Source: Gekko japonicus | Taxonomy: Eukaryota | Direction: 5' to 3' | Assembly (NCBI RefSeq): GCF_001447785.1 | Contig: NW_015173748.1 | Location: 139,309-203,308, forward strand | DNA: 64,000 nt | In this document: piece by piece, positions 6,859 to 48,184 of the stretch | Numbering within the stretch: position 1 is the stretch's first letter | How the letters are laid out: each line of letters starts with the position of its first letter | Position numbers and translations under genes: made by a program | The notes under the pieces: generated by a model | Told to the model about the DNA's origin: nothing | The model's database searches: none | Seen by the model: only the letters and a program-made list of their open reading frames with translations

Positions 6859-7020
6859 GATCAGCAGCACGGGTCTCCAGGTAGACAAAACAGAAACCTG
6901 GCTGAGGCACATTAATTTAGAGAGTAGTTTCAATTTTCTAGATCAGCAGCATGGGTCTCCAGGTAGACAAAAGAGAAACCTGGCTGAGGCACATAAATTT
7001 AGAGAGTAGTTTCAATTTTC
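6859..7020. repeat. 82-bp tandem duplication inside the LTR
   Basis: GATCAGCAGCAYGGGTCTCCAGGTAGACAAAA...TTTCAATTTTC starts at 6859 and again at 6941. Confidence 0.95.
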
Positions 7021-7801: not shown

Positions 7802-8141
7802 TAGGGTTGCCAGGTCCCCCGGGGGGTGGGGAAACCCCTGCTTGATGGGTCCGTTCCCCGCCGGCCTAGATCGGCCCGCCAGGGGGAACCCAACCCACAA
7901 AGTGCCGGGAGCACAGAGATGTGCCCGGAGTGATGACACCACTCAGATATGATGTCATCACGTCAGGCACATTGCGGGGGGGACGTTTTATGATTTCCCC
8001 TTGAATGATAGTGGCCCCGCTCCCAACGTGCCCGATGCAATGACGTCACTTCCAGGTAGCGTCATCACATGCGCGCCGAAGAACTCCTGGGGAGGGCCAG
8101 GACTCCCTCCGCTCCAGGTAAAATAGGACTTGGCAACCCTA
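7802..8141. mobile_element. hAT-type MITE, TAGGGTTGCCA family
   Basis: TIRs TAGGGTTGCCA / TGGCAACCCTA with perfect 8-bp TSD GTTGACAG. Relatives at ~10132-10717, ~11099-11393, ~11500-11605 and ~24219-24426. Confidence 0.9.
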
Positions 8142-9307
8142 GTTGACAGGACATTACTCCCAAATGATCTACACTTCTTGAAGTTGGTCAGATCCAGGAA
8201 AAGTCCCCAGAAGAGGCTGCCTATGAGGCAGACAAAAGGAAACTGAGTGAGAAAGCACAACTCCTCTCCCTCAAAATATGCACATTTCAAGGCTGTGTCC
8301 CTAAGTGGGAGGATTTCACACCAAAAAGTTAGCTCTAGAAGTTTTAGAAGCATTCTCTGCACAGGCTCAAAGCCTACTAGTGAGATGCACAGAGACCATG
8401 AAGGATAAAAACTAGTTAACTTTTCACATCTCTTCGTTAATCCCTTGAGGGGAAGTAAGGTTGTTTAGTTCCAGTGCCTCATGGCTATAGGCCCTTTTCA
8501 CTTATTAAAAATAAACTAAACAACCTGATGCCAGCTGAGTCCAAGCTCCATTACGTGTTGCAGTCGCGTAAACAGCTTGTTCGGCATACGGATGAGAAAC
8601 CACCCGAACTGTCAAACTTTCACTATTAGAGTGTTTCAGAAGCCAACTACCTGATCGAAGCCCACGTGGAGTTATTTGCTTAGAACCTATTTATACCCTA
8701 GTATTTCAGGATACCTCTACACAGGGTTAACCTATCCTGGAGTTCCAGTAGAAGGCAGGAGAGAAGAAAACAGAAGCATTGATAACAGAGATGTGCCTGC
8801 CAGCTTGGAAAGCCAGATAGTGCTTGTTATAAGACTGATCTTACCGGTTACAGAAAATAACCCAAATCAGCACAGGTACCAGTGCAAGAGTCCTTTAGGG
8901 GTATATTTTTAGCTGAGATCCCTTTAGTTACTCAGGTGCAGAATATCTTCTTAGATCATGAAAAAACAAGTCAGGCAGGCAGCAGTCTCTGTAAAAATAC
9001 ATACCCTGCATATCCTCAAGCTAAAGACAAAACCCTTTGAAAGATTTCAGTTTACACAGAAATAAAACTATAGCCAGAAAAAGAACGAAACCCAACTAGA
9101 GTTTATATTTATTAAGTTTCCTCAACAAAGATGCAGATGGAGCATCTGACAACATCTTTTAAGATCAACAATCCCTCCAGTACACAAAAAACGAGCGAGT
9201 TCATTAAATACTTTTTGCGGCACAAAGGAGACTTTCTGCAGTTACCCAAGGGACATATGATACAATGTAAAAGTAGAAAAAGGAAAAGCACAAATAGCTC
9301 ATCTTAC

Positions 9308-9448
9308 CAGATTTAATAGACCTATCACTACAACTTCCATCAATGGAAGGTGATGTCTGCTTCTTTACTTTAGGTGCTGGACCAAGTATCTTCATTGCCA
9401 ATCTTTTTCCATCACGCCAGGATGATGTACTTATTATACTGAACCTTC
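9308..9448 (-). CDS. CEP350-like exon (exon 9 homologue)
   Basis: 141 nt, tatttag|GA...TCTG|GTAAGA. GRFSIISTSSWRDGKRLAMKILGPAPKVKK...DRSIKS vs human GSSHLISTSSWRDGQKLVKKILGPAPRMEP...ERTAKS. Confidence 0.92.
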
Positions 9449-9919
9449 CTAAATAAAGAACCAGCAATGATATATAGATTGCAGTGTTCCTTGGGTTATA
9501 AGCTATCAGGTATGCTAGAGCTGGAAAAAATATTTTCACACACTACAGAGCATACAGACTGAGTCCCCATTCTGTGTCAACTGTAACACAATCACATGTA
9601 AGTTGTAGGTTCTCCTCAATTCCTGAGCTCGTGGTACCCAATGAGGAGAACAACCATGGTGAATGCAGAGAAGGGGCTTCAGCTTCCCCCCTGCCATTTT
9701 CCCAACCTGAAACAAGCAAGGGGGTCTCTTGGGAAAACCCATGGATCCCAGGGAACATGTTGGTTTTCCCGAATACAATAATGCCGAGATTGTTTAAGAG
9801 AAGGGACAACTTCTTATATGGAGTGGGTGCTGGTACAAAAAAAGAAGATTTAAATCGAACCCTGTTTAAAAAGAAACTACAGGCAGAGTGTATGCTTAAA
9901 AGCAAGACTTAAAATTCAC

Positions 9920-10036
9920 CTGGCTTGGAATAATGGCCTGGCAGCTCTGTTACTTTCTGGACTTTGCGCACTCTTCCTGTTGACTTTTTCTTCTTTCTTC
10001 TTTCAGCAGGCTTGTCTTTGAAAACAGAATCCTCTT
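9920..10036 (-). CDS. CEP350-like exon (exon 8 homologue)
   Basis: 117 nt (114 nt via the tandem acceptor CAG-AAG), donor CCAG|GTGAAT. EEDSVFKDKPAERRKKKKSTGRVRKVQKVTELPGHYSKP vs human DDISIKEKPAEKSKEKKVVKPVRKVQKVAQLSSTECRT. Confidence 0.9.
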
Positions 10037-11727
10037 CTGAAAATCAGAAGAATACATACTCACAAATATTGTTTACCACCTACATTGTTAAAACTGGGAT
10101 AACATACCTTTCTAGATTTGGGGTAGGCAGATAGGCTTGTCAGTCTCCAGGTAGGGGTGGGGGATCCCCCAATTTTGCAGGTTCTGGCCTGCCACCAGCC
10201 AGCTGACCAGTGGGGGAAACCCCACCCCCAAACAGAGGTCCCCATCAATGCTCCCTCTAAGCTGTGGAGTCATCTGAGCAAAAATTCTACTTTGTGAGCT
10301 ACTGGCATTAAAGTTGTGAGTGAGCGATTTGGCTACTGCATAAGTTAGTTTGCTCTGGAGCCATCCTTCCTGAGCTAAAACAAAAATCTGTGAGCTGGAG
10401 GCTAAAAAACTGTGAGCTAGCTCACACTAACTTAGAAGGAACACTGGTCCCCACACAATGTCAGCAATGCGCTGACATCACTTTCGGAAGTGCTGTCATT
10501 GCATCAGCAATGCTGGGGGCAATGCTCTACTTTTTTGGCAAAACTCTATGGTTTGTAGCTGTTTTTAACCATAGAGTTTTGCCCAAAAAGTAGAGTGCTG
10601 CCCCAACGTTGCCACCACAATGACATCACTTCTGGAAGTGACATCAGAGCATTGCCACCATCCCCGTCCACCCCCCAAATCCCCCGCTGGCAGAAGGAAG
10701 GCACCTGGCAACCCGATAGGCAGAAGGTCACTTGGAAGTGACTGGAAACTCTTCAAGCAATTAAAAGGAGCTCCTACAGCACTACTGAAATCACTTTCTT
10801 ATCGCTCCCTCTAAAGCTACCGCAGCATCTTCTCTTTTTTTGCAAAGGAGGCAGCACATGCTTGCACTTTCGCTCTGGACTGGAAAATGACAGCACCAGC
10901 ACCCTTTTCCATTCTCTTCCTCTTTCATGCATGCTCAGACACACCTTTGTTGTGGGTAGGAAAGGAGCATGCTATTATCTACCCCCCCCCCCGTCAAAGC
11001 TGCTATTTGCCTTTTTTAGAGTAAACACAGAGATAACTGTACATTATCCCCCTGCAGGGCAAACAAAGAAAGAACAACAAAGGAAAGGTTTCCTCATTTA
11101 GGGTTGCCAGGGGGAACTTACAGGAGAAAGAGAAAGGCCCAGGCCATGTTGCCAGTGTCCCACAGGAAGTGGCATCATCATGCCAGCAACTTCCAGATGA
11201 CACTCTGGTATCTGGCCAAAAACTGTGGTAAAACCTACTTCTACCATAGAGTTTTTGCCCAAATACTAGAGCGTCACCTAAAAGTTGCTGGTGTGATGAC
11301 ATCTTTTCTGGTGTGGTGCTGGCAATGTGATCTGGGCCTTCCTCTTTCTGTGTGTTCCTGCCTGGAAGTCACAGATACCTTTGGCAACTCCTATTGGGGC
11401 ATGGAGGATGTTTAGAGAAGTGGCCTGAAACCTGCCTCTTCCTTCCAGCCCTGATATTCTTTGGAGGTCTCCCATCCAAATACTTGCCAGGGCTATCCAG
11501 GTTAGGGCTTCCTTTCTCTTTCTACTGGTAAGTCCTCCCATCAGCCAGCTGATCAGCTGCTAGGGGGCAGGGCCTAGTGCCTTCACTGGGGGGTCTGGCA
11601 ACCCTATCCCCATCTGAGCGCTGCATACCTGCTCTGAAATGCTATAACTTTCATACAAACCACCACTTTGTGACAGACCACAGTCAGTGAGCTACCATTT
11701 TGTGACTGTTAGCTCCCAAGATGTTCA

Positions 11728-11937
11728 AATAAAAATTAAGCAGCTCCCAGAAAAATAAAATCTACTCTTCCCTTCCCTACATAATGCTAAATAAATGCCT
11801 CCAGTCTACCAGCATTTTAACATTTATTAGAATGAATAAAAATTAAACAGCTCCCAGAAAAAAATATCTACTCTTCCCTTTCCTATATACTACTAAATAA
11901 ATGCCTCGTCTACCAGCATTTTAACATTTATTAGAAT
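11728..11937. repeat. ~107-bp tandem duplication
   Basis: AATAAAAATTAARCAGCTCCCAGAAAAA...CAGCATTTTAACATTTATTAGAAT twice, starting at 11728 and 11835. Confidence 0.9.
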
Positions 11938-13420
11938 TTATTAATGTAGATATGCTGCTAGCTTTAATTAAACACAAAATAAAACTCATGTTCCACATCT
12001 GTCAGAAATCTTGAAAATGGTGCTATCAGATGTTTAATCCCAACACTCGGGATTATGAAGATACTTGGTGGGTGGACAGTAATGAAACTAGGCCAAGTAA
12101 ATATGGTTGTGGTTGCATTAGTATGCCAAATAAACCAACCAGAAGTTGTTTGTGACAAGAACAGGCCAGTCCTCAGGCTCACATGCTCCTTTCTTTTTTC
12201 CGTTGGCCCGAATCCTCTCCTGCAGGCAACATGGCACAGCACTAAAATTGCAAACTGGGAAGCTTCCAATAGACATTGATTTGTTGTGACACATCCAAAT
12301 TGGGCAAACCACAGAGCATTTCTTGCTTGACAAAATTACCGAGTCCTGATTCGAAATCAGGTGGATTTAAGTCTTCCTTTTAAACATCAAACTTTGGTCT
12401 GTACTTTCTTTGCAAACAACAGTTCTGTTTCAATGTTCTCTTCCTTGTATCAGCAACCACTCCATGCTAGATATTACCCATTCGCTTAAACAATCTCTGC
12501 TCTATTCTGGAAGACTAGCAGTGCAATCCCAAGCAGAGCCAGTGGCGTACCAAGGGGGCGGGGGTGGTGGTCCACCCCGGGCACAGCTTGTGGAAGACTT
12601 TTGAAGGGGGCCCTCAAAGCCAGCCTCATACTGCCTCGAGCTGAAAGTTTTTTCCTTTATTTTAAAGTGCGGTTCTGGCTGCAGCCACTAGGGGCGCATG
12701 GAAGTCTGAGTATAGCAAAAAAGCATACTAGGATTGATCAGTTAGACTTCCTTTTCTCCCAGACAGAAGCAAACTTCCTTATCAACAACCGAGCCAGTAC
12801 ACTGAAAGCTGCTACAGAAATTGCCAGCCTGCAGGTTATTTTCTTTAACAATCTACGAACCTTTCTCTTTTCCTTTCCTTGCACCCAGCTCATGCGAAGC
12901 AGAAGTTAGGGTGTTACATAGGGTTACCAGATATGTTTGGTGTCCATCCTCTTTTGGGCACTTAAAAAAAAACAGATTAAATTTCCCCTTTTTGGGTTGG
13001 GAGGCTGTTTTGCCCTACAGCCCCCAGTGGAGGCAAGTCTCAGTTTAAATAGTAGTGGTATTTAAAATGAGATTTCTCATAGAGATCAGTTGTTTGAAGT
13101 AGTGAGTCGGAAACGTTATCTTTTTTGCTTTTCAAAATATAGTGACCCTACTGTTGCAGCAAAATAAAACCTTTCCCTCTTTTTAATTTCTCTCCCTCTT
13201 TTCCGTATGTTTCTCATTCATTTCTGTCTCCCCTCAACTAATTTTTCTGTGTCTCCCCCCCACCCTTTATTTTCACTTCTTGGTCTCAAGACCTTCTCAT
13301 CCCTATCATGCCTGGTGAAAGAATATATTTAAGAGTAGTATAGTAGCAAATCTTTGTTAATATTATGAACAGAAGGCACTGGGTTTGCTGGGCACTGTAT
13401 ATTGCACTGGTTCTGCTGGG

Positions 13421-14130
13421 TGTCAGCTAATGCTGCCATGGTCTGGAATGTGGGGGGTGCCCAGCTCCCTCTCCTCCTCTTCACCCTCCCTTCCCCCGCG
13501 TCTCATTTGCTGTGCTCTGTTATCTGTTTGGTGTCCTTGAAGGCTCGGCTCTGCCGGGTCCGCTTTTCCCTCTGGGAATGTAACTGCTGTATTTTGCCTG
13601 CGTTTACAGGTGCTTGCCTATTGGGTTCACTGCATCAGGGGGGCTGGTTTGAAAGGGTATAACTGTACAGGCTACCCATCCTCCCGCCATTCCTGACACA
13701 AGAGTTCATGGTGTCACAAGTACTAACCCTCAATAAACTGAAACTTCTGAAGGAATGTTGTTGAGTGTTTTGACTGGGAGGCCTGACAAAGGTGCCTTTT
13801 GAGGTATGGAAAGCTCGTAAGAACTTAAGAGGTGCTACGCACTACATGAAACCTGAACGCCAAGCAACTACGTTGGGCCGACTTCTTTTGTAAGTTCAGG
13901 TTCACTCTACACCACTTCCCGGGTAAATCGAACTCACTAGCTGACGCTTTATTGTGCCTCCCTCAACACAATAGCCAGAGGGAGGGCGTCATTGACTCTG
14001 TGTTCACTCCTGCCCAGTTGGGAGGGGCGGTTACAATGCGCAGCCAGGCATCCGCCCCAAAGGAGGAACCCATGGAAAAATGGGAAATGAAGTTCGCATC
14101 AGCGTTTTCAGAAACTGATCGGGATGTGTG
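13421..14130 (+). mobile_element. Ty3/Gypsy remnant: LTR-like segment joined to a pol RNase H fragment
   Basis: ~13790-14050 translates FEVW..KNL/EVLRTT*NLNAKQLRWADFFCKFRFTLHHFPGKSNSLADALLCLPQ, the Gypsy RNase H C-terminus. Preceded by AATAAA (13732) and ...CCTGACA (13788). Confidence 0.8.
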
Positions 14131-15245
14131 TGTGTGTGGAAGCGGGCTTCCACCCCCCCCTGCTTGGATTGACATTCTGAGCACCGCATAATGGCACTGC
14201 ATTTGCTGGGCACTGTACATTGCACTGGTTCTGATGGGCTTCCAACACACACCCCCAGACTGTGTTTGGCATCAGCTGGCATTGTCACAGTGGCACTGGG
14301 TTTGCTGGGCACTCTTATGATTGCACTGATACTGCTGGGTACCCTGTACAGTGCACTGATTCTGCTGGGCTTGCAAAAATGCCCCCCCCCCTTTCTACTG
14401 CACAGATTCTCTAGTTTGACTTTAGTCTTTTGGAAACAATGGAGGATGGGAGCACCTTCTTTGGGTCTGGTGAAGCTTGTGATCACTGTTTTGACACTTT
14501 TGTGATGCTTTGGCTAGTGTTAGTAGAAGTTAGTCCAAGGGTAGACTCCTGGTTCTCAAAAATGCCTTGTAGATATATGGGATGGTCAGCTCTTAGGCTT
14601 CAAAATGAAGAACAGAAGCCCATCCAAGTCCCTGCTCAGAACATGAGTGGTGTGATGGAATTATTATTACTATTTGCCATCAATTCACAACTGACTTATG
14701 GCAACCCTGTGGGGTTTTCAAGGCAAGAAACATTTGGCAGTGGTTTGCCATTGCCTGCCTCCACGTCAGCCCTGCTTAGCTTCTGAGATCTGACGAGATC
14801 AGGCTATCCTGGTCAGGGCTAGGCTGAGAGTAATGTGACTGGCCCAGCGTCACCCAGCAAGCTTCCATGGCACAAGTGGGGATTCGAACCTGGATTTCTC
14901 AGATCCTAGTCCAACACTTTAAGCACTACACAATGCTGGCTCTTGTGATGGAATAGCGTGTTGGAATTTGATTTGTTTTTCCTGGAATAATTATATATAT
15001 GAAGTTAAATAAATTTTTCACTGTCTGCATTTCTTTTCTGGCCATTGAAACAAACTTTGGGTTCAGTGGCACATTTAAGACCAAACTTTGTTCTGCTGCT
15101 TCAGACCAACATAGCTACCCACCTTTTTTCATATAGGAAAGGGGCCCGGACCTGGACAGCCCCAGCCTAGCCTGATTTTGTCAGATCTCAGAAGCTAAGC
15201 AGGGCCAATGCAGAGGCAGGCAATGGCGAACCATCTCCAAACATT

Positions 15246-15393
15246 TCGTTGTTCAGTCGCACAGTCGAGTCCGACTCTTCGCAACCCCATGGACCAGATC
15301 ACGCCAGGCCCTCCTGTCTTCCGCTGTCCTCTGAAGCTTCCTCATTTTCATGTCCGTTGCATCTGTGACACTGTCTAACCATCTCATCCTTTG
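15246..15393 (-). mobile_element. Short BovB 3' fragment inside a 5S-derived SINE
   Basis: Same 3' end as the 4579-5069 copy; 15-bp TSD CCATCTCCAAACATT (15231-15245, 15394-15408). Confidence 0.9.
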
Positions 15394-15539
15394 CCATCTC
15401 CAAACATTACTTGATTCCAAAAACCTACGGGTTCACCACAAATCACCTGTGACATAACAGCAAAAATATAAAAATAAAAATAGAGGAAAGGTGTTTTTCA
15501 CCCGCCTTGGGTGCCAAATAGGTTAGGTATACCACTGTA

Positions 15540-15935
15540 CAGGGCTATTTTTGGGCAGGAACGCACAGGAACGGAGTTCTGGCTGGCTCCCAAGTTGGCC
15601 ACGCCCAGCAGGAACTCATTAGCATAATAGGCCACACCCAACAGCAGAAATCCATTAGGATTGGCTTCATTAGGGGTGTGCGGCCTAACATGCAAAAGAG
15701 TTCCCGCTACAAAAAAAGCCCTGGGTTTTGACAACAAACATGGTAAACAGAATAACAAGCAAAAGGTGGGTGTGGCTGGATAACCACACTTCTGGTAACA
15801 TGGGGCTGCGTCCTAATGTGCTAATGAGCTGTGCTGGCAGGAGTGTGGCCTAATATGCTAATGAATTTCTGGTGTTGGGTGTGGCCTATTATGCTAATGA
15901 GTTCCTGCTGGGCTTTTTCTACAAAAAGAGCCCTG
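15540..15935. mobile_element. hAT-type MITE, CAGGGCT family, composite with an internal terminus at ~15724
   Basis: CAGGGCTATTTTT...AAAAAGAGCCCTG, perfect 8-bp TSD CCACTGTA; repeated ATGCTAATGA subterminal motifs. Confidence 0.8.
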
Positions 15936-16399
15936 CCACTGTACAGTTAGAGCCTTCCAAGCCCATTAATTTCAATGGACTTAGAAGCATGAGACTCTCC
16001 TTTGGATTGCACTGGAGGTATTTTTCAGCTTCTTGCATACTTCACTAATACTTGATAAACTAAGAGAAAATGGAGGATTAGGTAATATCAATATGGAAAG
16101 TATGACACCCTTGCAGGATGGACAAAGATTTACAAAAAAGATTGTGTGTGTGTGAAATATTAATAAAAACAGATTGTTAAAAGAAGATACTGGAGCCAGC
16201 ACCTAAACTAGAGCGGCAAGATAATCAACCTAAAGTGGAGAAGTGGGATAATCGACCTTCATTCACTGAAGATTTCCTAGTTTGCAGTTCTGGTGCTGTG
16301 CATGAGAGGAATTGGCAAGTATGAAAGAAGAGAGAGTACGTGTGGTCTTTAATTCATTGTTGTTACAAACAAATCAGTATTTGAAAGCGGCCTGCTTAC

Positions 16400-16513
16400 C
16401 TTCTAACTGGCGTTCCAAGTCTCTGCAGAGCTCTCTACTGAGACTGAGGAATTCTTCTTCATGCCGTACCTTTTCATCAGGAGTATAAATCTTGGCTTCT
16501 GATGGACTGAAAT
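16400..16513 (-). CDS. CEP350-like exon (exon 7 homologue)
   Basis: 114 nt, tattag|AT...GAAG|GTAAGC. DFSPSEAKIYTPDEKVRHEEEFLSLSRELCRDLERQLE vs human GFNPSETKIRTPDGKVWQEAEFQNMSRELYRDLALHFA. Confidence 0.92.
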
Positions 16514-17402
16514 CTAATAGAATAGCATAGCTATACCGAGCAAACCATTTTAAAAAGAAATCATCATGTTATGCTGGCTGAAATTAATTATATCAGGAGA
16601 AAGTACTATTTTAAGCACCTCACACATATTAGCTAGTTCATTACCACAATGATAAAGATACACAGAGATCCTAGCCTGTACTATATAAATTAAGAAGCTT
16701 TTCTATACAAAAGCAGCATTCATTATAGGGTATTCAAAAAATAAGGTACACGAGACATTACAGGAAAAACTAACCCCCCAAAGGGTCCAATGAAGCTTTA
16801 ATAGATTTTACTGATTCCCAAAGATTCCTGAATGCCAACATTGTATTTTATGTCTGTTGTGCACATGCAGAGAGCAAGTAATTTCAAATAAGTTAATATA
16901 AGAAAAAAGAAAATTTCAGGTAAAACATTATATTGCTATGACAATCACTGGCAGCTTAACAACTACAAGCAAATAAATCTAACAGAGATTGTGACACAAT
17001 CTGTAGCAACCCAAAATGGCACCTGGGATTGTGTGGCCCCCTGACATTCTGCAGGATCTTCGGGAGTCGTTTGGGGCTGCTAGAAGGCTGGAGAAAAGCA
17101 CTTAACATGAGCTTTAGGGGGAGCAGAGCAAGACGGCAGGAAGTGGAGGTCAGCACAGAATATCATTTTCCCTCCCACACAGAATCTCACAGATTCCCTG
17201 CTTGTACAGTTGAATACAAAACACGTCTATGGAAGGGAAGAAAATGCAACTAGAGCCCAGGGAACCAGAAAGCATTTTAAATGTTAAAATATTTCCATTG
17301 GTTAGAATTCTAACCACCACCACTGAAAGCAATAAATAAAGGCCACTGCATACCAATACAGATTTATCGTCTGCACAAAGACTAGAGACAGAGATTACAT
17401 AC

Positions 17403-18256
17403 CTTTATATGCAGGAGAAGGAGATGTAGCTGTCACTTTTCTGAGTTTAGGTGTTACTGTATTCTCTGTAGCTGCGACGATCACGGGATGATCAACATAG
17501 TCCTGAAACTGTTCTCTGCTATTCAGGTCTTCCTGAAACCGCCACTGTTTCCTAATCCGTCCCTTCAGTTTTTCCATTTTAGCATCATGCTGTCGATGCT
17601 TTAAGATAGCTAGCCTGTGGGTACTGGAGGTACTGGAAGAGGAAGCTGAAGATTCGGCCAACTGTGGGTCTTTCAGTTCAGCATCTGGGATTGTGATACT
17701 TAGAGACATTTTAGCATACTCATCTCTGGATCCCTCAGTCTTTTCCTCCTTTGAGCTTGTAGGTGTTACACCTTCCAAGGAAGGATCTGAGTTTCTAATC
17801 CGTCCCTTCAGTTTTTTCAGCTTTGCATCATGCTGGTGATGCTTTAAGATAGCTAGCCTGTGGATACTGGAGGTACTGGCAGAGGAAGCCGAAGATTTGG
17901 CCAACTGCGGGTCTTTCAGTTCAGCATCTGAGATTGTGATTGTGGGATTGTGAGACATTTTAGCATACTCATATCTGGGTCCCACAGTCCTTTCCTCCTT
18001 TGATCTTGTAGGTTTTACACCTTTCAAGAAAGGATCTGAGTTCTGCAAGGCATCAATTGCTGGTCGGTCATTCAAATATCGAACAACGGTTTCATCCACA
18101 GAAGACGGGCTTTTGAAATCTCTGTTCTGCAAATCTGGTTCATCTTTTTCATATGCCATATGGCTCGCTCCTTCTGCCTTATTCCTGGCTTTGTGCTTCA
18201 AACAATTTGCCTCTGACTGGCAAGAGCTTTTATAAGATGGGGACCCCTTTGTATCC
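17403..18256 (-). CDS. CEP350-like gene, large exon (homologue of human CEP350 exon 6) with internal tandem duplication
   Basis: VDETVVRYLNDRPAIDALQNS and HRLAILKHRQHDAKMEKLKGRIRKQW...DHPVIV...KLRKVTATSPSPAYK match recalled CEP350 (INDTVVRFLNDRPAIDALQNS; QRLDILKRRQHDVKLEKLKERIRKQW...DHPVMV...KVRKVATAPPAPAYK). Acceptor ctcttgctag|G, donor AAAG|GTATGT, 854 nt, phases 2 to 1. Confidence 0.92.
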
Positions 18257-19635
18257 CTAGCAAGAGAGGCATATTGCACTATAAAACAAATGCAGGAAGT
18301 TGTATGTAACTCTGATCAAACTGTATTAGTGTTACCCAAATAGGCAGTCTCGTAATTAGTTGGGGGCATTAGCTTTAAAAAGATAGAGTGAGAGGGGGCA
18401 ACTGGGATTCTCCATCTGTGTATATTGGGATTTTTGCCTTATGAGAACTCTCAAAGTGAACCAGGCAGATGTTCAACTGGAAAGGTTTTTATTAAGAACA
18501 AGAGATAGAATAAAACAAAATACACACAATAAGCGCACATACAAAAGCTAGCTAAGAGAAACACAGGGAGGAGAGGGGGAAAGTGATTTGGGGAAGCATG
18601 ATAATTACTATTTTTGTAGAGGTCCATGGAAGCAGTAAAACAACCAGCGTTTCAAGAGAGAAGAGAACCCAACAAAGTGGGGGTGTAGGTGAAGGACCCA
18701 AGGCATACACAGACAACTGCTGGGAAGCAGGGTGCTTCTGATATAGGGCAAAAGGTACCCTCAGGTGCATATGACATATTTGCCAGAAAAACAATGACTT
18801 AGTGAGTTTTACTGAGGTGGACAATGGTGTGTGTGAGGTCTGATGTGCCTACAAGTATCTGGCAGGAAAGGCTAATGGGTTAGGTGAACAGAATTAAGTG
18901 TCACTTAATTAAGGTAAATGGGTGCAGGGAAGTGAGGCTGAGTATGGATGGGATGAGTCCAAGGGTAAGTCAACAAATCATAGCTAAGGTTGCCAACAAT
19001 CTTCTAGAGAGAAAAAATATCCTGTCCCTTTAACAGAGGATTGTTGGGCAGAAATAGACAGCTGAAGCTTATTATGACATGGAGATAAAAGAACATCACC
19101 TGGTAAAATAACACCCCATTAAGCCTCTGTTAAAGGGACAGGACACATTCTCCAAACTACCAGCAAATCATTGAGAAGGGGAAATACTCTGTTTGAAAAT
19201 TCCAGCTTCTCACACACATAAATCTCCCTTGACAAGGATTCTATAAGCTGGGCAATTTCCCCATCTCCCTCTATTTTTTTCTTTAATTGACTTCCAAACT
19301 TCTGTGCCTCCCAGAATATGCTCAGTCCTCATCAAGCCAAGTTTTTTCAGAGGGGTAGGGTTAGGGTTTTTTTTGGTAAATGTATAACCTCATATGTTCT
19401 GCATACCTGGAAATCCTCTAAATTTGCTGTATGTTTGTTTCCCTGTTTCAAATTCGTATTTACCATTAAATACAGTAATATATTACAAAAGTAAACTACT
19501 CTTAACAGTTGAATGCAGTCAAGCCAAAGCTGGTCAAAACCTGGACCTGTGCAACCATTCAGAAGCTTCCATAACAAGCCAGATAGACATTATACTTCTA
19601 TTTTGATATCATAATTCGACTTTTCAAATGTTTAC

Positions 19636-19789
19636 CATACAGACCTAAAAGAAGCAGAGGCCTCACTACATTCAAAATTACTTTTCTTTTTCATGCTGTT
19701 ATCCAAAGCCGTAGCAGGAACAGGGCAGTGAGGGGACCGCTCCATCTTTTGGCTGGAAGACCTGCAGGCTGAAGCAAAAAACCAAGAAT
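19636..19789 (-). CDS. CEP350-like exon (exon 5 homologue)
   Basis: DSWFFASACRSSSQKMERSPHCPVPATALDNSMKKKSNFECSEASASFR vs human DSWVNAPISKSTKSRKEKSRSPLRATTLESNVKKNNRVEFREPLVSYR. Acceptor cctag|AT (phase 1). Two phase-2 donors, after 19645 (AG|GTCTGT) or after 19636 (TG|GTAAAC), both compatible with the next exon. Confidence 0.75.
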
Positions 19790-19905
19790 CTAGGTAAATC
19801 AAATTTATTATTATGGTTTGTGACCAGCACAAGAAGAATCTAGGTATCCACAATGCTCTTGGGATTCTATTAGCACTTAAGCACAGTAAATAAATCATTA
19901 CTCAC

Positions 19906-19927
19906 CATATTTGGAAGCAGCCTCAAG
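19906..19927 (-). CDS. Putative 22-nt micro-exon of the CEP350-like gene (LEAASKY)
   Basis: Branch-like TTCTAAT, acceptor ttcctgaaag|, strong donor ATG|GTGAGT. Phases 0 to 1 fit the next exon; (K)LEAA resembles KLEVA of CEP350 exon 4. Confidence 0.45.
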
Positions 19928-22900
19928 CTTTCAGGAATAAGCAATTAGAAGACTGTTTTCTAAATAAAATTTGTTACATTTGTTTTAAATAAAATTCATA
20001 AAAATAAGTATGACAATTAGTGCAAGTTGTTGCGTTAGGCTATTCTGAATTAAAGATCCACATTTTTGTCAGTATTTTGGAACTCTGGAAGAGCAGTTAT
20101 TTAATTTAAAAAAACCCAACCTCCATTAAAAAATTCCAAATCTCTACAAGAACCAACCTAAAAGCTTGACAGAAGCAATACATTTTCATTGCCCTCCTAA
20201 AAAGCCATAAGTGAAGGTGCCAGCCATGCTGTATAATGGAAGACATAGTTGTGGTGCTGCCACACAAAAGGCCCCATCAAATTGTGAAACCTGCAGAGAA
20301 GAGGCATACAAAGAGTTGATCTCACAAGATAACTTCAATATTAGGTAGGCTGACACACGCTGTGTGAGACCCTGGCCTGGCTAAAGATTGAAAGTGAGCT
20401 CATAGGCCACAGATTTCCTAACGGGGTTGACAAGAGAACTTCCTTGTCCTGCAGGAGGCTTAGGCGTTCACAGTAGGCAAGCAACCACTTTTCTGTGGTA
20501 ATGCCAGCTGTCTTGCACCAAACTAAGCCGATTATTAGGCCTACCCTCCCCAGGACACTCTGGCTGCACTGCTAATCTGACGCCAAAATTAGGTGTTGTT
20601 ATGTCTTGGGACTGCTTCAGAGCTTGACCATTAAGAAATACATTTACAGAATTGGTTTCAGACCTGTAAGTAAAAACATACCAACACAAAGGGTAGTCTC
20701 CCATGTCAAGTCCCGAACCATAAGGGGCAATCCTGTCCTTATATATAAACGTGTTTTTGCATGGCGACATTCTATGCTTGCCAAAATCAGTTGGCGGCCT
20801 GAACTGCCCATCAGAAGGTGTGCCTGAGTCCCGCCAACAGAGCCAGCTCCTGCCAAAATTCCAATCTGAACAGTTTACCACAGCAGCTGAGCAGCCATTT
20901 GCCTGACCAGCCTTCTTTAGCCGTCAGGAGAAGATCAGTGGAGGAGCAGCCGTGGCTGTTTGCCTGCCGACCATTCTTCAGCCCTCGGGAGAGTCTTGCA
21001 GCAGGTAGGGCCCATCTCCCCACCCAGCTGGATTCTGGCGAGCCGGCAGGGCCTGCTGGGGGGGGAGCAGCCGGCCTACCTGTTTCCCTGAAACCATCCA
21101 GCCCTAAACTATCTTGCTGGAAAACATTCCTAAGCCACACTTCTCTACCATAAATGACAACTTTCAAAACTATAGACATTTCACAACACTCATTTCCGAA
21201 GACTCCTTCTTCTCATTCTCACGTAACCTACTGAGACTTTCATCATGACCACTCACTTTCAACCCACCTTCCCTTGAGACCTCTGCTCTAACAGAGTGGA
21301 CAGTGCGACCACAACCACATTGAATGACACGGACATCCAACATAAATTGACTTCACAGACTGCCCAGTTGTTGACACTACTCCACAGACCCCTGTGTGCA
21401 ACATTTTCTGGGCCACATTGTGTGACCTTGGACACCGGCTGTTGTGTAACATAAGGTATGTCAGACTTTACTTCCACATTTGTATATTTCACTTACAGAC
21501 TGCTAATATTTACTTTACCACCTTCCAGCCTATGCATTTGTTACACATCACATCTTTCTAGAGCTCGTTATATTGCTTGCACGAGCTGTACTGCTAGTTA
21601 TTTTATAACACAATTTTGCCGTGTAGTAGGATGAAAGGCTACGTCAAGGGATGTTAAGGTTGGAGACAATTTCTGTTTTACTTCTGGTTATCAATGAACC
21701 TTCATATGATGAGTTTACCCATGTAGCAAATGGGAAAAGAACTCCCTGTTCTGAGTGGGTGGGCATGTGGCTGCATCACTTTAGTTTCCTTGTGACACTA
21801 TTTTTTTGCATTAGCTAGATGAAAAAATACTTATCCCACCCAGGTGTTGCAAAATGAATCCATAACACTAACTACAGCAACTACATAAATGATATCATTT
21901 TTTCTAATGGGTTTATTTGGCTTGCACACCATGCAGTTCTTCAAGTTTGCATTGTAGGTTGCTTCACTTAACCTTTGAGAACAGCTACAAAACCAGGACT
22001 ACTAGGGTTAGGAGGCACATACAGCCACCCACCAAATATTTCATGTGCCTGATGGTAGACAGCTTCCACCACTGCCAGCTGATCAGCAGTGCTGTAGGGG
22101 ACTCGAGGATGCCAAATAGATACATATACAAATGTCACAGGACTTTCTCCTTTCTCTTCGGTGGATATCAATGAGTTGTGCAATGATCCTTCTAGAAGCC
22201 AGCCCAGGTCTTAGCATGTCACAGACTGTATCACTGCTCCAGCTGCAGTGACTCCTCTACCACACAGGAGAGGTTACTAGCACTTAAACCCTGCCCTCTA
22301 GCCCTCTGGTTCAGAAGTTCTTTTACAATGTGAAGGATGTGCCCAAGATTGGTGTCCTGAAAACTTGACAGCTGTGTGCATGTTGGGAAGAACTTGAAAG
22401 GGTCCTCTCCACCAAGTTTATAGCGATGTTTCCCATCGGATGACTCCAATGCATACCCAGTCTTATCTCCTGAGTTGTGGAAAAGTGTTTGTGTGGTTTG
22501 GAGTCCCACCCTGGCATGTGACTGGTCCAATGAGGTCAACTGTTTTGGCATGCAGGGTTCTCCAGTATTTGGGCCACAGCAAAATTTCTTAACACTGCTG
22601 TCCTGAGGAGTCAAAAGCTTCTTCAGGTGAATTTCTCTCAGTCATTATCTCAGCTAATAGGCATCGGACCTTTGTTCTTTTTTATTTCATTTTATTTATT
22701 AAATTTTTATCCCGCTCTCCCTGCCATGGGTATTATTATTAAGGGTAACAAGCTGGGAGCAGCTGTTGGACAAGAGCTATTTGAAGGAAAGTCATATTTT
22801 TCTGCATAACTGGTATCCCTCACCTCCTACACCACTCTTGCCTTTCTGTATTGGTGCCCCTTCCCCTCACAGGGGGCACAGAGGCTACCCACTTTTCTAA

Positions 22901-25643
22901 TATCAAAAAGAATTTGTGTGGGGGGTATAAAATATTTTTAAAACCCTTCTCCAAATATCCTATTTTGGGATTCTATAAATTCTCAGGGCCTTGAACAGCT
23001 CAGTACCCCCCATCTCCCCCTTTCCTCCTTCGATTCTCAGTTACTCTTCATATTCCATGCCTCTTGTTGTATGCTCAATCTTCATCAAACCTCCGGGGGA
23101 GGTGTCCTTTTTCTTGTGGTTAATATGCCAAGTCCTATTTTTCTGTCTACGTGAGGAAATTCCTGAGTAAGTTAAAATTCCTATTTTCTCCATGGGTGGC
23201 CCCATTGTGCGGTTTTTGTTACTTATCCAGGGGCCAACTACTTTCCTAAGATACAATGATAATAACATTGGTTATGATAAGGGAAAGGGTGCTTCCAAAT
23301 ATCACGCTGATCAGCATCCAAACAGATCACATTCAGCAATATTTCATAGATGAGGGACATCCACTTGCAAGATATTACAATTCATGATGGGAGTACTACC
23401 TCCTATGCAGATCCCTTAAGTCTGTTTGAAATGTATTCTGCCCTTCCAACCACACACTGCAAATGCATAGATTGTGTGGTGACCGGCAGTCCAGTTCAGA
23501 GTGCCAATTGCCCATAAATCCATTAGTGTGGATTGATTTTTACCTATGGGCCGCCAACTTATGCATTATGCAGACTGAGCCTGGGGTTACAGTGTTTAAC
23601 AGTGGATTGTTATTTCTCCTCATTTCCTGCATGTGCAGTGCCCAATTTGGATCAGGAATGTGACCTCTGTGGAGAAAGTGTTCCACATGATTTTCTTGAC
23701 CTGAAATGGTCAATTGGCAAAACCCACATTACCACAGGGTACATGCAGGGTTCCCCAACAGGCCAAATAGCACCCCCTGGAATATTTCAGGTTGGGAAAA
23801 CAGCACAAGGAAAGGCTAAAGACCCCTCTTCACATGTGTTGTGGTTCCAGTCAGAACAAGGCACCACACATGCAGGAACTGAGGAAACCCTACACCTCTC
23901 TCTCTCTCTTTTTTTACAGAGGTTGGGAAACTCAGACGCAAACTGTGTCCTCTATAATGAATTGGCCCATTTAATATTGTGCATACCTTTTTTACTTCTT
24001 TTCCTGGTAATACTGGCAGATGGTTTCTTGGCATCCATGACATAGTCCAACACAGCTGTTCTGATAGGAGCAACTCTTCCAATTTATTTTCTTTGTGTTG
24101 CTGCTATAGTTTGTATACGTATATTGAAAACAATTAGCAAGAAGCAAATATTAAAAACCTGTCTTGCATTCATAAAAAGATAGTAGTTAAACCACAGCTT
24201 TACAGATTGAGTTGTACATAGGGTTGCCAGCTCCAGGATGGGAAATTCCTGGAGATTTGGGGAATGGAGTCTGGAGAGGGCAGGGTTTAGGGAGGGGAGG
24301 AATTTCTGTGGAGTGTAATGCCACAGAGTCCACCTTCCAAAGCAACCACTTTCTCCAAGGGTGATCTCTATCACCTGGAGATCAGTTCCCCGATCTCCAG
24401 CTACCACCTGGAGTTTGGCAACCCTATATAATTGTATGGGCATAGCTCAAAAATCCTGAAGCAAAATAAAACAGAGTTGGACTGAGAACTCTTCAGGCAC
24501 CCTAGATCCCAATTTTTACTTGCCCCAGACCATTAGCATATGTATCACTCATATTTTATATTTTAACCTGTCTTGCTTTTCTCTTGGTTCAATTGGAAGT
24601 CTTTTAAAGAACGTGAACCTATCTATTTAACAAAGCCCGTGGAATTAACAGCCTAGTAATCACACACACAAAACCTTTATTGGCATTGAAAGCACAGCCT
24701 AGTAATCTAGTAAAACCCACAGAATGCCATAGAATAAAATACATTTTATAGCACATTTCATGGGTAGTGTGCATTGTTCTCCTCTGTTCCACATTGTCTT
24801 CACAACCTTGAGAACGGAGGCCTATGGAACCCTGAGAATGACTGGCCTATGGACTTCATGACAGAATGGGGAACTGAAGCTGGGTGGGTGGCCAGCATCC
24901 AATCCACTATACCACCTTGGGTCTAATAATGTAATTGCTGAATAAATTCAGGTGGAAAGCCATGTTGGTCTGAAGCAACAGAACAAAGTTTGAGTCCAGT
25001 GGCACCTTTAAGACCAACAAACTTTAATTCTGGGTATAAGCTTTCATGGGCATGCATACTTGTTCACATAAATAAATATTATTAATCTTTAAGGTGCCAC
25101 TAGACTTCTGTTTTATTGCACTATAATAAACACAGATATCTCTATGAAATTCTCATGATTTCAGTAATCTTTACAAGAATGGTACAAGGTTGGCCAATGT
25201 TGTTATCCCCATGATACAGAAAGAAGGCTGGATTATACTGAGATTTGAACTCTGGACCTCTCTGCCCACTCTTGGTTTCTACACTACATTATCTGTAAAC
25301 ACTGTGAACATCACATCTGTAACACTGTGAACATTATTCAACTTGAATAAAACTTTGTTGGTCTCAAAGGTGCCACTGGACTCAAACTTTGGTCTGGTGC
25401 TTCAGACCAGCAGGGTTATTCACCTGAATCTATCTTCACTGTGAACACAGTCACACATATATAAAACTGAAAAGGGAAGGAGGGTTTTCTTTGGGTCTTC
25501 TCAGTGGAACTGAAACATTCAGATGTCAGGACAAAGAGTAACAGCCAAAGACAGTGGGAAAGTCTCAAGGAGCTGCTCCTACCAGAGACGTTCTTGGCCT
25601 GTTCCTTCAGTTTTAGTTTTTTTAAGAAAGCATGGCTCTAACC

Positions 25644-26029
25644 CAGTGGTTCTCAACCTGTGGGTCGCAACCAGTGTTCCCTCTAAGCAGAGTTAGTGTG
25701 AGCTAGCTCACAATTTCTTAGCCTCCAGCTCACATGGCTCCAGAGCAAACTCATTTATGCAGCAGCCAAATGGCTCACTCACAAGTTTAATGCCAGTAGC
25801 TCACAGAGTAGAAGTTTGCTCACAAGACTCCACAGCTTAGAGGGAACATTGGTCGCGACCCCTTTGGGGGTCGAACGACCCTTTCACAGGGGTTGCCTAA
25901 GACCATCGGAAAACACAAATTTTCGATGGTCTTTATGATAGCAACGAAAATAATTTTATGGTTGAGGGTCACCACAACATGAGGAACTGTATTAAAGGGT
26001 CGCGGCATTAAGAAGGTTGAGAACCACTG
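25644..26029. mobile_element. SPIN/URR1-like hAT MITE carrying a nested MITE (25672-25851)
   Basis: CAGTGGTTCTCAACCTGTGGGTCGC...CCCCTTTGGGGGTCGAACGACCCTTTCACAGGGG...AAGGTTGAGAACCACTG matches the recalled URR1/SPIN non-autonomous consensus; TSD CTCTAACC/TTCTAACC. Confidence 0.85.
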
Positions 26030-26223
26030 TTCTAACCTTTTTATTTATGGAGATGAAAACAAAAATATGCAACAACATTCTCATCAGTTATTAACCTAAG
26101 AGGTAACTTGCTCACACTTGTCAGTGTTCTGACAAGTGCACATGTGGCAACTCAATACAGTGGGATTTATGAGTAATATTTGCTGGATTATATCCTAAAC
26201 GTTCGGTTCCCAGAAGTGCTCAC

Positions 26224-26241
26224 TGTTTGTAACGCAATCAT
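26224..26241 (-). CDS. Speculative start exon of the CEP350-like gene (MIALQT; exon 26224-26274)
   Basis: ttacag| acceptor, caccATG context, phase-0 donor ACA|GTGAGC compatible with the micro-exon. No convincing homology. Confidence 0.2.
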
Positions 26242-27445
26242 GGTGAAGTGAGTAGATATTTGTTGAAATTTTAACTGTAATACTGAGGAATAGTGTGCTT
26301 TAATCAATATTACAGACTTAGGAAGCCACATAGAAATATTAAGACATATGAGAACAATTTGTCCCCTGGGAGTCCACATTTCTCCCAAAATGTCCATCTC
26401 CTTGTTGTGTAATGCATTTAGGGGCAAGCCTGTAAAAGATCTACTCAGTAGTAAGTCCCATTTTGTTTAATCAGGCTTGCTCTCAGGAAACTGTAGGATT
26501 GTGGCCTTGAGGCATGTTTATTTCAAAGGAAATCCCACCTTCTTCAATGAAGCTTCTAGTAAACCTTAAAAGGAAATCTGAACAGCAGCAGCAAGCTACC
26601 TGCTGTTCCATTTTTCAAAAGCCTGCATGCCTACTCAAACAGAAGTAGCTTCATCTTTGTTTTTGGTCAGCATTATTATTATTAAAGGTTTTTAAAGTCC
26701 TACATGAAAAGGATCCCCTTTTAACCAAAGAACGGCATCGTAAAAAAGGTTTCCTTTTAAGGGTTCGTAACCCTCTACACCTAAAGGAACATACATTAAT
26801 AATAAGCCATTTCAAATCATTATTTTAAATATATCTATCTTAGACTCTCTAACTCCAAGGAAATACTTTTAATAATAAATAGGTATTTTTTATCGTACAA
26901 CGAAGTAAATATTTACTATTGCTACTACTCATAATACAGTTAATTTGATTTTATCCTACATCTCAGTGAATATTCATTATAACTAAGATATTGGGTTGGT
27001 TTCCCCCCCCTCATCCTACCTCTGGCTGAGTGAATATTTAACAATGTTTCTAGGGGAGGGTTACCTTCCATCTGAGTAAGCAATTCACTGTTCGTAACAG
27101 CAATTAAATATTTCTTATTCTACCTCTGAGTGAATAATATAAGTACAGCAGCATTTTTTGCGTTTTTTATTCTACGCGTGCTTGAAGACTTCTTATTAAT
27201 AATAACGGGATCTACTGGCTGTTTCATCTGCTGTACACGGTACTTACTTGGCAATTAAAAAAACACACACACCGAACCCGAGTCCCCCCCACCCCCCTCT
27301 TCAGGGACGCCGCACAGCGGGGGTGGGGAGCCAGCTCGCTACAGGGGCGGGGCCAGGGTGGGCGGAGGAGCAACGGCCGCCCTGGGAGGACCGGAGGTGG
27401 GCGAGAGGAGCCGCTCTGTCCCCTGCCCGGAGCTTTGTGGTTAAA

Positions 27446-27475
27446 ATGGCGGGGACTGAGGGGGCGAGCCCGTGA
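27446..27475 (+). other. Possible uORF (MAGTEGASP*) upstream of the ABL2 1b start
   Basis: aaaATGg strong Kozak context, TGA at 27473-27475; overlaps the YY1-like motif; a uORF only if the TSS lies upstream. Confidence 0.4.
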
Positions 27476-27661
27476 GGGCCTGGCTGGAGCGCGGCGGCGG
27501 CGGCGGAGTAGGCGGTGGCAAAAGGAGGCAGGGCAGCCCTGTGGGGAGCCGGGCTTTGCCGGGCGCGGTGCGACAAGCGGCGTACGCGGCGGCATGTGAG
27601 CGAGAAGCGAAGCAGGAGGCCGGGGGCGCTGGCGGGGGCCCGGGACGGGAGGAGACCGGGG

Positions 27662-27875
27662 ATGGGCCAGCAGGTGGGCCGTGTCGGAGAGCCGGGCGCC
27701 GCCGCGCCCCAGCAGCCGCCTCAGCAGCCGCAGCAGCCGCAGCCTCCTCCTTCTTCTTCCCAGCCGAGGGGGCTTCGTGGGAGCAGCAGCAGCGCAGCCA
27801 GGCCCGCCAGCCGGAGGCGAGAGGTGGCAACCCCCCGGGGCGCCGAGAGCGGCTTCAATATCTTCACCCAGCACG
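27662..27875 (+). CDS. ABL2: ABL2 (ARG) tyrosine kinase, first coding exon of the myristoylated 1b isoform
   Basis: Translates MGQQVGRVGEPGAAAPQQPPQQPQQPQPPPSSSQPRGLRGSSSSAARPASRRREVATPRGAESGFNIFTQH, matching recalled human ABL2 1b (MGQQVGRVGEAPGLQQPQPRGIRGSSAARPSGRRR...GFNIFTQH). Ends phase 1 at CACG|GTAAG; lies in a CpG island; has the MG myristoylation start. Confidence 0.97.
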
Positions 27876-48014: not shown

Positions 48015-48184
48015 NNNNNNNNNNNNNNNNNNNNNNNNNNNNNNNNNNNNNNNNNNNNNNNNNNNNNNNNNNNNNNNNNNNNNNNNNNNNNNNNNNNNNN
48101 NNNNNNNNNNNNNNNNNNNNNNNNNNNNNNNNNNNNNNNNNNNNNNNNNNNNNNNNNNNNNNNNNNNNNNNNNNNNNNNNNNNN
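48015..48184. other. Assembly gap (170 N)
   Basis: Run of N. Confidence 1.

What the first reader, a model, noticed from the sequence alone, without database searches (positions are those of the whole stretch)
9016..27300. Diverged, apparently truncated CEP350-derived gene head-to-head with ABL2
Seen: five exons with intact frames, GT-AG sites and phases matching CEP350 exons 5-9. Motifs are much changed from human (APPAPAYKGFNPSETKIRTPDGKVW becomes TSPSPAYKDFSPSEAKIYTPDEKVR). Exons 2-4 are unrecognisable or shrunken, and no exon-10 coiled-coil ORF (RRHYDTDEVRQYI...) occurs in the 9 kb downstream. Known: CEP350 is ~3100 aa, with a microtubule-binding N-terminus and C-terminal CAP-Gly and CEP43/FOP-binding regions; in human the gene divergent from ABL2 is SOAT1, not CEP350. 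Inference: a lineage-specific partial duplicate of about 474 aa in my full model (including the speculative 5' exons), retaining only the basic N-terminal module and possibly acting as a new microtubule or centriole regulator.
Basis: partly seen in the sequence, partly recalled or inferred. Interest (0 to 1): 0.85.

Follow-up and report, generated by a model that had tools for sequence, protein, structure and literature searches.

The report
Diverged CEP350 5' copy beside ABL2
Next to the ABL2 promoter this gecko-like genome carries a real, weakly expressed CEP350-derived stretch whose original start is destroyed but whose 474-codon frame stays open; it is probably an extra copy, and neither that nor its truncation could be proven from this window.

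Summary
On the minus strand, six exon pieces, all phase 1-1 with GT-AG sites, match gecko CEP350 residues 49-447 in order. They sit 3 kb from the CpG island that holds ABL2 exon 1b. Nothing from residue 448 onward is found anywhere in the 64 kb.

New here: the DNA just upstream of the first piece is the decayed 5' half of the same ancestral exon. Its ATG is now CTG, codons are deleted, there is an in-frame stop, and a 2-nt insertion shifts the frame. This locus therefore cannot make the conserved CEP350 N-terminus.

The copy has changed 23 of 104 positions that are invariant in 18 canonical sauropsid CEP350s. Each canonical protein changes 0-6. Even so, 1,422 in-frame bases carry no stop and no frameshift. 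An unnamed genomic ORF from another public run set is its sister, so the copy is probably old.

RNA support is thin: about 1-4 reads per exon, and one contig whose end is clipped at an exon boundary.

I could not test whether a canonical CEP350 lies elsewhere in this genome, or whether the gene continues left of the window. The tree cannot separate time from rate.

My reading is a diverged extra copy that still codes (about 0.42). The rivals are a rearranged sole orthologue (0.28), a sex-limited gametolog (0.12) and a transcribed pseudogene (0.12).

The parts
27662..27875 (+). ABL2 exon 1b. ATG at 27662, ends ...FNIFTQH, donor G|GTAAGC. The rest of the window to the right has no further ABL2 coding exon recognised by motif.
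   Evidence: translation and motif positions. ABL2 identity is from my own knowledge of the 1b N-terminus.
27300..27900 (.). CpG island shared by the two divergent units (GC 0.73-0.76, CpG observed/expected 0.7-1.0).
27241..27450 (-). Candidate non-coding first exon of the CEP350-like unit. Consensus donor CAA|GTAAGT, with GT at 27247-27246, at the left edge of the island. Its use is not shown.
24075..24197 (-). Decayed 5' half of the ancestral first coding exon (residues 1-48). ATG is now CTG at 24197-24195. Several codons are deleted. There is an in-frame TAA four codons before residue 49. The ENKLE remnant is out of frame because of a 2-nt insertion at 24076-24075.
   Evidence: frameshift-aware protein-to-DNA alignment
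23987..24074 (-). Preserved 3' half of that exon (residues 49-78). Contains the first in-frame ATG, the conserved Met of ...VMDAKK. Donor G|GTATGC.
19667..19768 (-). Exon for residues 78-about 111. It is the most altered piece: 10 of 16 invariant positions are changed.
17403..18278 (-). Large exon (residues about 112-322). In-frame tandem duplication: copy 1 at 17794-18042, copy 2 at 17551-17793.
16400..16513 (-). Exon for residues 322-358.
9920..10036 (-). Exon for residues 359-397.
   Evidence: about 3 RNA reads in X12
9308..9448 (-). Last recognisable exon (residues 398-447). Donor TCTG|GTAAGA, phase 1.
   Evidence: X2 contig 9303-9450 is clipped at the acceptor; about 4 reads in X13.
9108..9307 (-). 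Possible read-through 3' end. The frame runs 34 codons past the donor to TAA TGA (9206-9201). AATAAA lies at 9113-9108, followed by a T-rich stretch. Its use is not shown.
   Evidence: One X13 read lies mostly in 9136-9299.

Best explanation
This is a second, diverged copy of the 5' module of CEP350, running from the ancestral first coding exon to the exon that ends at residue 447. It lies 3 kb from the ABL2 CpG island, on the opposite strand.

Shown:
- Its canonical start has decayed.
- From the next in-frame Met (residue 61) onward, an open frame of about 470 codons with intact splice sites is kept.
- Many residues that every canonical CEP350 conserves have changed.
- It carries an old in-frame 82-residue tandem duplication.
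- It is represented in RNA at a low level.

Inferred:
- It arose by duplication of a CEP350 segment from the same chromosomal neighbourhood.
- It is transcribed from the ABL2 bidirectional promoter.
- It makes a basic, mostly unstructured protein that holds only about the first microtubule-binding region. Such a protein could decorate microtubules, but it would lack the second binding site needed for bundling, the CAP-Gly domain and the centrosome/FOP-binding end.
- Either it ends at the AATAAA 195 nt past the last donor, or it splices on to something outside the window.
For: Homology and gene structure:
- The pieces match gecko CEP350 residues 49-447 in order, with GT-AG sites and a single frame.

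Loss of the canonical start:
- The start codon is lost, and there are two frame-breaking indels and a stop in the remnant of residues 1-48.
- These residues are nearly identical in all five named geckos.

Changed constraint:
- 23 of 104 invariant positions are changed, against 0-6 in each of 18 canonical proteins tested by leave-one-out.
- The tandem copies differ at dN/dS 0.84 with dS 0.126.

Frame retention:
- There are no stops or frameshifts in 1,422 nt. The chance of no stop under neutral change is 1-9% at 5-10% divergence.
- Every indel seen inside the frame is a multiple of three, whereas the 123-nt remnant next door has two frameshifts.
- A 24-residue motif (VDETVVRYLNDRPAIDALQNSDPF) is untouched.

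Age:
- ORF P0039, from another public run set, is sister to the window at 99/96 support. It shares two derived changes and lacks the duplication.

Expression:
- Eight probable RNA runs from two studies hold 28-52% of the 31-mers of 16300-18400. Exons make up 47% of that stretch.
- RNA reads lie on the last two exons, and one contig is clipped at an exon boundary.
- Depth corresponds to roughly 1.5-2 TPM, which is low for a sole CEP350.

Functional mapping:
- The microtubule-binding regions are mapped in PMC4357431.
Against: - No second CEP350 locus was seen, because the rest of the genome was not available to me.
- The last exon keeps a strong phase-1 donor. The 9.3 kb to its left holds several repeat-derived stretches and could be a single intron.
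- X2 contigs at 8501-8866 suggest that transcription continues past the AATAAA.
- Keeping a frame while residues drift is also what a sole orthologue would show if only the downstream domains still mattered.
- The tree does not fix the copy's position. Placing it outside all sampled geckos, or inside Gekkonidae, is not rejected (p-AU 0.30 and 0.25). The long branch may therefore be time rather than rate.
- The organism is unidentified.
Confidence: 0.42

Rival explanations
1. Sole orthologue. This is the only CEP350 of the species. A rearrangement placed its second exon beside ABL2, and the gene continues left of the window across an intron longer than 9.3 kb. After the original start was lost, translation begins at Met 61 or further downstream. 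The N-terminal region then drifts but must stay in frame to reach the essential downstream domains.
For: - Strong phase-1 donor at 9308.
- Several repeat-derived stretches in the left flank.
- Unique X2 contigs downstream at 8501-8866 look like pre-mRNA.
- Frame retention combined with near-neutral residue change fits a 'spacer that must stay open'.
- A placement outside all sampled geckos is not rejected. Ancestral states at two positions of the last exon fit an unsampled early gecko family.
- No second copy was seen.
Against: - It requires the sole copy to lose residues 1-60, which are almost invariant from geckos to birds.
- It requires 22% of invariant positions to change.
- It requires two precise breakpoints that spare both genes.
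- Expression of about 1.5-2 TPM is low for CEP350 (rough estimate).
Confidence: 0.28
2. Sex-limited or otherwise non-recombining gametolog. One deletion, running from just upstream of ABL2 to CEP350 intron 1, removed the genes that normally lie between them and also CEP350's own promoter. That leaves a decaying full-length CEP350 copy head-to-head with ABL2. The working copy sits on the partner chromosome.
For: - One deletion in the arrangement known from human (ABL2 divergent from SOAT1, CEP350 further on the same strand as SOAT1; my own knowledge) gives exactly this geometry and orientation.
- Decay is strongest at the 5' end.
- Several unchecked first-reader notes in this genome describe W/Y-like decaying gene blocks on other pieces.
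Against: - Those notes are unverified and concern other pieces of the assembly.
- ABL2 exon 1b here looks intact.
- 1,422 nt without a frameshift is a lot for a decaying copy.
- No depth or sex data were available.
Confidence: 0.12
3. Transcribed pseudogene fragment. This is an extra copy that no longer codes. The open frame is chance plus youth, and the RNA is by-product transcription from the ABL2 CpG island.
For: - Start codon lost, and two upstream ATGs lie before Met 61.
- dN/dS of 0.84 between the tandem copies.
- Invariant positions change about as often as other gecko-conserved positions: 22% against 21%.
- Low RNA level.
Against: - No stops (1-9% by chance) and only in-frame indels across 1,422 nt, with all twelve splice sites intact.
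- Untouched motif islands, and a fourfold difference in change rate between exons: 43% in the second piece against 14% in the large exon at gecko-invariant positions.
- The sister ORF in another run set is also open.
Confidence: 0.12

Closest known systems
Canonical CEP350 / CAP350 of squamates (for example Euleptes europaea P0213, Paroedura picta P0216)
   Same: Matches residues 49-447 in order, with 55-79% identity per exon. Shares gecko-type residues in the large exon. The composition is basic and Ser-rich. It corresponds to most of the first microtubule-binding region (human construct 1-560, PMC4357431).
   Different: - The first 48 codons are destroyed.
- 23 of 104 invariant positions are changed.
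- It has an 82-residue internal duplication that no relative shows.
- No second microtubule-binding site, CAP-Gly domain (PF01302) or C-terminal region is present in the window.
- Its neighbour is ABL2, not TOR1AIP1/QSOX1.
Truncated genes born from partial segmental duplication (human SRGAP2C, ARHGAP11B, NOTCH2NL; from my own knowledge)
   Same: A 5' part of a large gene, copied with its introns, that keeps an open frame and may act on the parent's partners without the parent's other domains.
   Different: Here neither the duplication nor the truncation is demonstrated. The original start is lost rather than kept. The copy appears much older (tandem copies at dS 0.126).
Degenerating W/Y gametologs of conserved genes
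   Same: Relaxed constraint, loss of the 5' end, and neighbouring genes brought together by deletion.
   Different: No evidence of sex linkage for this piece. The long frame is still intact.

Membership tests
CEP350 (centrosome-associated protein 350) orthologue | Sequence homology to the N-terminal region, in the same exon order | tested here: met
   tblastn with five gecko proteins covers residues 49-447 in order, E down to 1e-54. phmmer finds only CEP350 proteins and unnamed public-run (Logan) ORFs.
CEP350 (centrosome-associated protein 350) orthologue | Conserved N-terminus (residues 1-48, ...AWDAFSQTKAALRHIENKLE) with its start codon | tested here: not met
   Only a remnant survives. ATG is now CTG, codons are deleted, there is an in-frame TAA, and a 2-nt frameshift. 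The HMM for residues 1-50 finds nothing in the window.
CEP350 (centrosome-associated protein 350) orthologue | Residues invariant across canonical sauropsid CEP350 are kept | tested here: not met
   23 of 104 are changed, against 0-6 per canonical protein by leave-one-out.
CEP350 (centrosome-associated protein 350) orthologue | Downstream coiled-coil regions, CAP-Gly domain (PF01302) and C-terminal PF14309 region | tested here: inconclusive
   Absent from all 64 kb. They could lie left of the window, where no data were available.
CEP350 (centrosome-associated protein 350) orthologue | Single copy in the genome, in conserved synteny (TOR1AIP1 - CEP350 - QSOX1 in human) | not testable with these tools
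Within the window the neighbour is ABL2.
Expressed partial-duplicate gene | A parent copy exists elsewhere in the same genome | not testable with these tools
   No access to the assembly. Earlier notes hold no second CEP350 locus.
Expressed partial-duplicate gene | Open frame kept beyond chance | tested here: met
   No stop in 1,422 nt (1-9% by simulation at 5-10% divergence). All indels in the frame are multiples of three, while the adjacent remnant has two frameshifts.
Expressed partial-duplicate gene | Spliced transcripts that end within or just after the copied part | tested here: inconclusive
   RNA reads lie on the last two exons, and one contig is clipped at the acceptor of the last exon. 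There were too few reads to see what the donor at 9308 does.

The most novel reading that the evidence does not exclude
An old truncated paralogue of CEP350 (tens of millions of years; the tandem copies differ at dS 0.126, and a sister ORF exists in another public run set) whose frame has been preserved. It keeps only about the first microtubule-binding region, has doubled part of it, and is driven by the ABL2 bidirectional promoter. It would act away from the centrosome as a microtubule decorator, or as a competitor of full-length CEP350.
Probability: 0.25. Interest if true: 0.6.

Novelty: new member of a known kind. Interest (0 to 1): 0.4.

Why it matters
If a canonical CEP350 exists elsewhere in this genome, this locus would be a rare vertebrate case of a long-lived gene fragment. 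It lost its start, recruited a neighbour's promoter, doubled an internal segment and still kept a frame of about 470 codons. That makes it a natural experiment on what the first microtubule-binding region of CEP350 does by itself.

If it is instead the only CEP350, then a gecko lineage has dispensed with an N-terminus that is conserved from lizards to birds. That would say the segment is not essential for centriole function.

Either answer needs only one whole-assembly search.

Tried and rejected
Its length window stops at 3,106 aa, so a full-length protein carrying the 82-residue duplication could have been excluded.\n- **No protein encoded by the window itself** appeared in any search.\n- **The single read-laying run** was set by me to 85% likeness and included a highly expressed repeat at 5528-6183. 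The joint and loose-end tables were filled with repeat reads, and the junction at 9308 was not resolved. This was my error of design.\n- **Earlier-notes searches** for CEP350 and for nine neighbouring genes (QSOX1, TOR1AIP1, SOAT1, LHX4, NPHS2 and others) were blank.\n- **Paper searches** for 'CEP350 + gecko' and for the ABL2 N-terminal motif were uninformative.\n- **Pfam** finds no domain in any exon piece, as expected for this region.\n- **Rfam** finds nothing in the expressed repeat.\n- **A parsimony count of gecko-specific residues** gave too few informative columns.\n- **AU tests** rejected neither alternative placement.\n- **The apparent match of 'LPIEIR...' at about 2390** to a downstream CEP350 motif was set aside.
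Full report
**What is there**

The minus strand between 9.3 and 24.1 kb holds six exon pieces with consensus splice sites:
- 23987-24074
- 19667-19768
- 17403-18278
- 16400-16513
- 9920-10036
- 9308-9448

I read the splice sites directly. Every junction is phase 1, so the chain keeps one frame.

A phmmer search of the large exon against 1.8 billion representative proteins returned 22 hits. Every hit that carried a name was a CEP350; the rest were unnamed public-run (Logan) ORFs. tblastn with five named gecko CEP350 proteins lays residues 49-447 on these pieces in order, with E values down to 1e-54. His quoted motif spans the 17403/16513 junction.

The large exon carries an in-frame tandem duplication of 249 + 243 bp. 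None of about 60 relatives shows it. It was already noted separately as s1-816687.

On the plus strand a CpG island (27300-27900) holds an exon that begins MGQQVGRVGE and ends FNIFTQH plus a donor (27662-27875). From my own knowledge this is ABL2 exon 1b. A consensus donor, CAA|GTAAGT, faces the other way at 27247 (note s1-816750).

**What is missing**

tblastn and profile HMMs built from 15 sauropsid CEP350s find nothing for residues 440-900 anywhere in the 64 kb. They also find nothing for residues 1-50.

By itself that absence is weak evidence for truncation:
- The 9.3 kb left of 9308 holds several repeat-derived stretches. There are reverse-transcriptase-like ORFs and piles of diverged RNA reads at 5528-8151.
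- The last exon keeps a strong phase-1 donor.

**The decayed start (new here)**

The DNA immediately upstream of residue 49 is not an intron. A frameshift-aware alignment of gecko residues 1-80 to 23980-24400 (sequence) shows several lesions:
- ENKLE (residues 44-48) lies two bases out of frame with VAP... (residue 49 onward).
- QT.AA sits further up, back in the residue-49 frame.
- A TAA stands four codons before residue 49.
- Several codons are deleted.
- CTG TGG ... AAC stands where the geckos have Met-Trp-Ser-Asn.

Residues 1-78 were therefore one ancestral exon, and its 5' half has decayed here. These 48 residues are nearly identical in all five geckos and well kept in a bird. There are several independent lesions, so this is not a single assembly slip.

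The first in-frame ATG left is the conserved Met of ...VMDAKK. Two upstream ATGs precede it.

**How the rest has evolved**

Identity per exon:

| Piece | Window vs geckos | Geckos vs each other |
|---|---|---|
| Second piece | 55-61% | 88-100% |
| Large exon | 71-77% | 75-87% |
| Last three pieces | 59-81% | 74-100% |

Other measures:
- At columns invariant in all other canonical rows, the window has changed 23 of 104. Each of 18 canonical proteins changes 0-6 in a leave-one-out count.
- The rate at invariant columns (22%) is no lower than at columns conserved only among geckos (about 21%). The old constraints are therefore largely gone.
- The change is uneven. At gecko-invariant positions it is 43% in the second piece and 14% in the large exon. 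A 24-residue motif is untouched.
- The two tandem copies differ at dN/dS 0.84 with dS 0.126. The duplication is therefore old, and its copies drift almost freely.

Against this drift, the frame is intact:
- 1,422 in-frame bases hold no stop. Simulation gives 1-9% for that outcome at 5-10% neutral divergence.
- All indels inside the frame are multiples of three, while the 123-nt remnant next door has two frameshifts.

Something keeps this frame open.

**Relatives**

The closest sequence is P0039, an unnamed 169-residue ORF from a 1.75-kb public-run (Logan) contig. Like the window, it reads into the intron as ...AYKGM-stop. It lacks the duplication, shares two derived changes at invariant positions, and has changed 9 of 50 invariant positions itself.

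In a maximum-likelihood tree of the large exon, the window and P0039 pair at 99/96 support inside the gecko clade (100/96). They sit on long branches and are weakly sister to Euleptes. Two alternatives are not rejected: placing the pair outside all sampled geckos, and placing it inside Gekkonidae (p-AU 0.30 and 0.25). I therefore cannot tell a long time from a fast rate, or speciation from duplication. I rest no claim on the branch length.

No annotated protein of 160-509 aa resembling this copy appeared from the five annotated gecko genomes.

**Expression**

- Eight probable RNA run sets from two studies hold 28-52% of the exact 31-mers of 16300-18400. Exons make up 47% of that stretch.
- In the one reads call, the two raw RNA runs put roughly 1-4 reads on each of the last two exons. 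That is about 1.5-2 TPM by a rough conversion.
- One X2 contig (9303-9450) begins with seven unaligned letters exactly at the acceptor of the last exon, which suggests it is spliced to the previous exon. It runs five letters past the donor.
- One X13 read lies mostly in 9136-9299.
- Two near-perfect X2 contigs lie further down, at 8501-8866.
- My choice of 85% likeness, and of a stretch that held a heavily expressed repeat, flooded the joint and loose-end tables. The use of the donor at 9308 is unresolved.
- An AATAAA lies 195 nt past that donor, after a read-through stop. It is the only AATAAA in the 2.3 kb scanned, so it is suggestive only.

**Mechanism**

Human CAP350 binds microtubules through two N-terminal regions, mapped with constructs 1-560 and 555-900. 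Each region decorates microtubules, and both are needed on one molecule for bundling (PMC4357431).

The window's frame corresponds to roughly residues 60-470. That is most of the first region and nothing else. A protein made from it would be basic (92 K+R against 62 D+E). By inference it could bind microtubules without bundling them and without centrosome targeting.

**Weighing the explanations**

The decayed start, the changed invariant positions, the low RNA level and the odd neighbour argue that this is not the working 5' end of the species' only CEP350.

The retained donor, the repeat-derived stretches in the flank, the possible downstream pre-mRNA and the 'frame kept, residues free' pattern are just what a rearranged sole orthologue would show.

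A third possibility uses a single deletion, from upstream of ABL2 to CEP350 intron 1, on a non-recombining chromosome. It reproduces the geometry in one step. It gains some prior weight from unchecked notes of W/Y-like decay elsewhere in this genome.

My probabilities:

| Explanation | Probability |
|---|---|
| Extra copy that still codes | 0.42 |
| Sole orthologue | 0.28 |
| Gametolog | 0.12 |
| Transcribed pseudogene | 0.12 |

**Limits**

- The organism's name is coded.
- ABL2 identity and the human gene order come from my own knowledge.

Noticed in passing
window 5528-6183: A repeat with very high RNA depth: hundreds to over a thousand reads deep in X12 at 3% sampling, and word depth above 10,000 in contigs. 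Reads are mostly 85-95% alike. There is a sharp pile of read starts and ends at 5727, and small 'goes back' joints at 5820-5856 suggest a variable internal mini-repeat. No Rfam family matches.
   Followed up: partly
window 8501-8648 and 8716-8866: Two near-perfect 151-nt contigs of run X2 (0-1 differences) lie in unique sequence downstream of the last CEP350-like exon. Low X1/X2 depth runs from 8316 to 8971 and stops at about 8316. This could be pre-mRNA of a longer unit, another transcript, or DNA carry-over. The strand is unknown.
   Followed up: no
window 9546-9800 (minus-strand ORFs) and 23533-24045 (plus-strand ORF): Similar peptide strings (...FQVGK.A.GK.K...) appear on opposite strands. 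They look like two copies of one interspersed element in inverted orientation, inside two introns of the CEP350-like unit. The second copy ends close to the exon at 23987-24074.
   Followed up: no
window 27695-27760 (+): ABL2 exon 1b carries a Pro/Gln-rich run (PQQPPQQPQQPQPPP) over a GCAGCAGCC-type tandem repeat (TRF 27712-27743). From memory it looks longer than in mammals. Not compared with any reference.
   Followed up: no
window 27248-27595 (-): An ATG-initiated frame of about 116 codons runs on the minus strand through the CpG island, right up to the antisense donor at 27248 (phase 0). It does not fit the phase of the next CEP350-like exon and is probably a GC-rich chance ORF.
   Followed up: partly
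window 2336-2830 and 4592-5182 (-): Reverse-transcriptase-like ORFs of two different retroelements lie in the flank left of the last exon. One of them contains 'LPIEIR', which mimics a downstream CEP350 motif.
   Followed up: partly
window 39846-40185 and 48015-48184: Two N runs inside what should be ABL2 intron 1.
   Followed up: no
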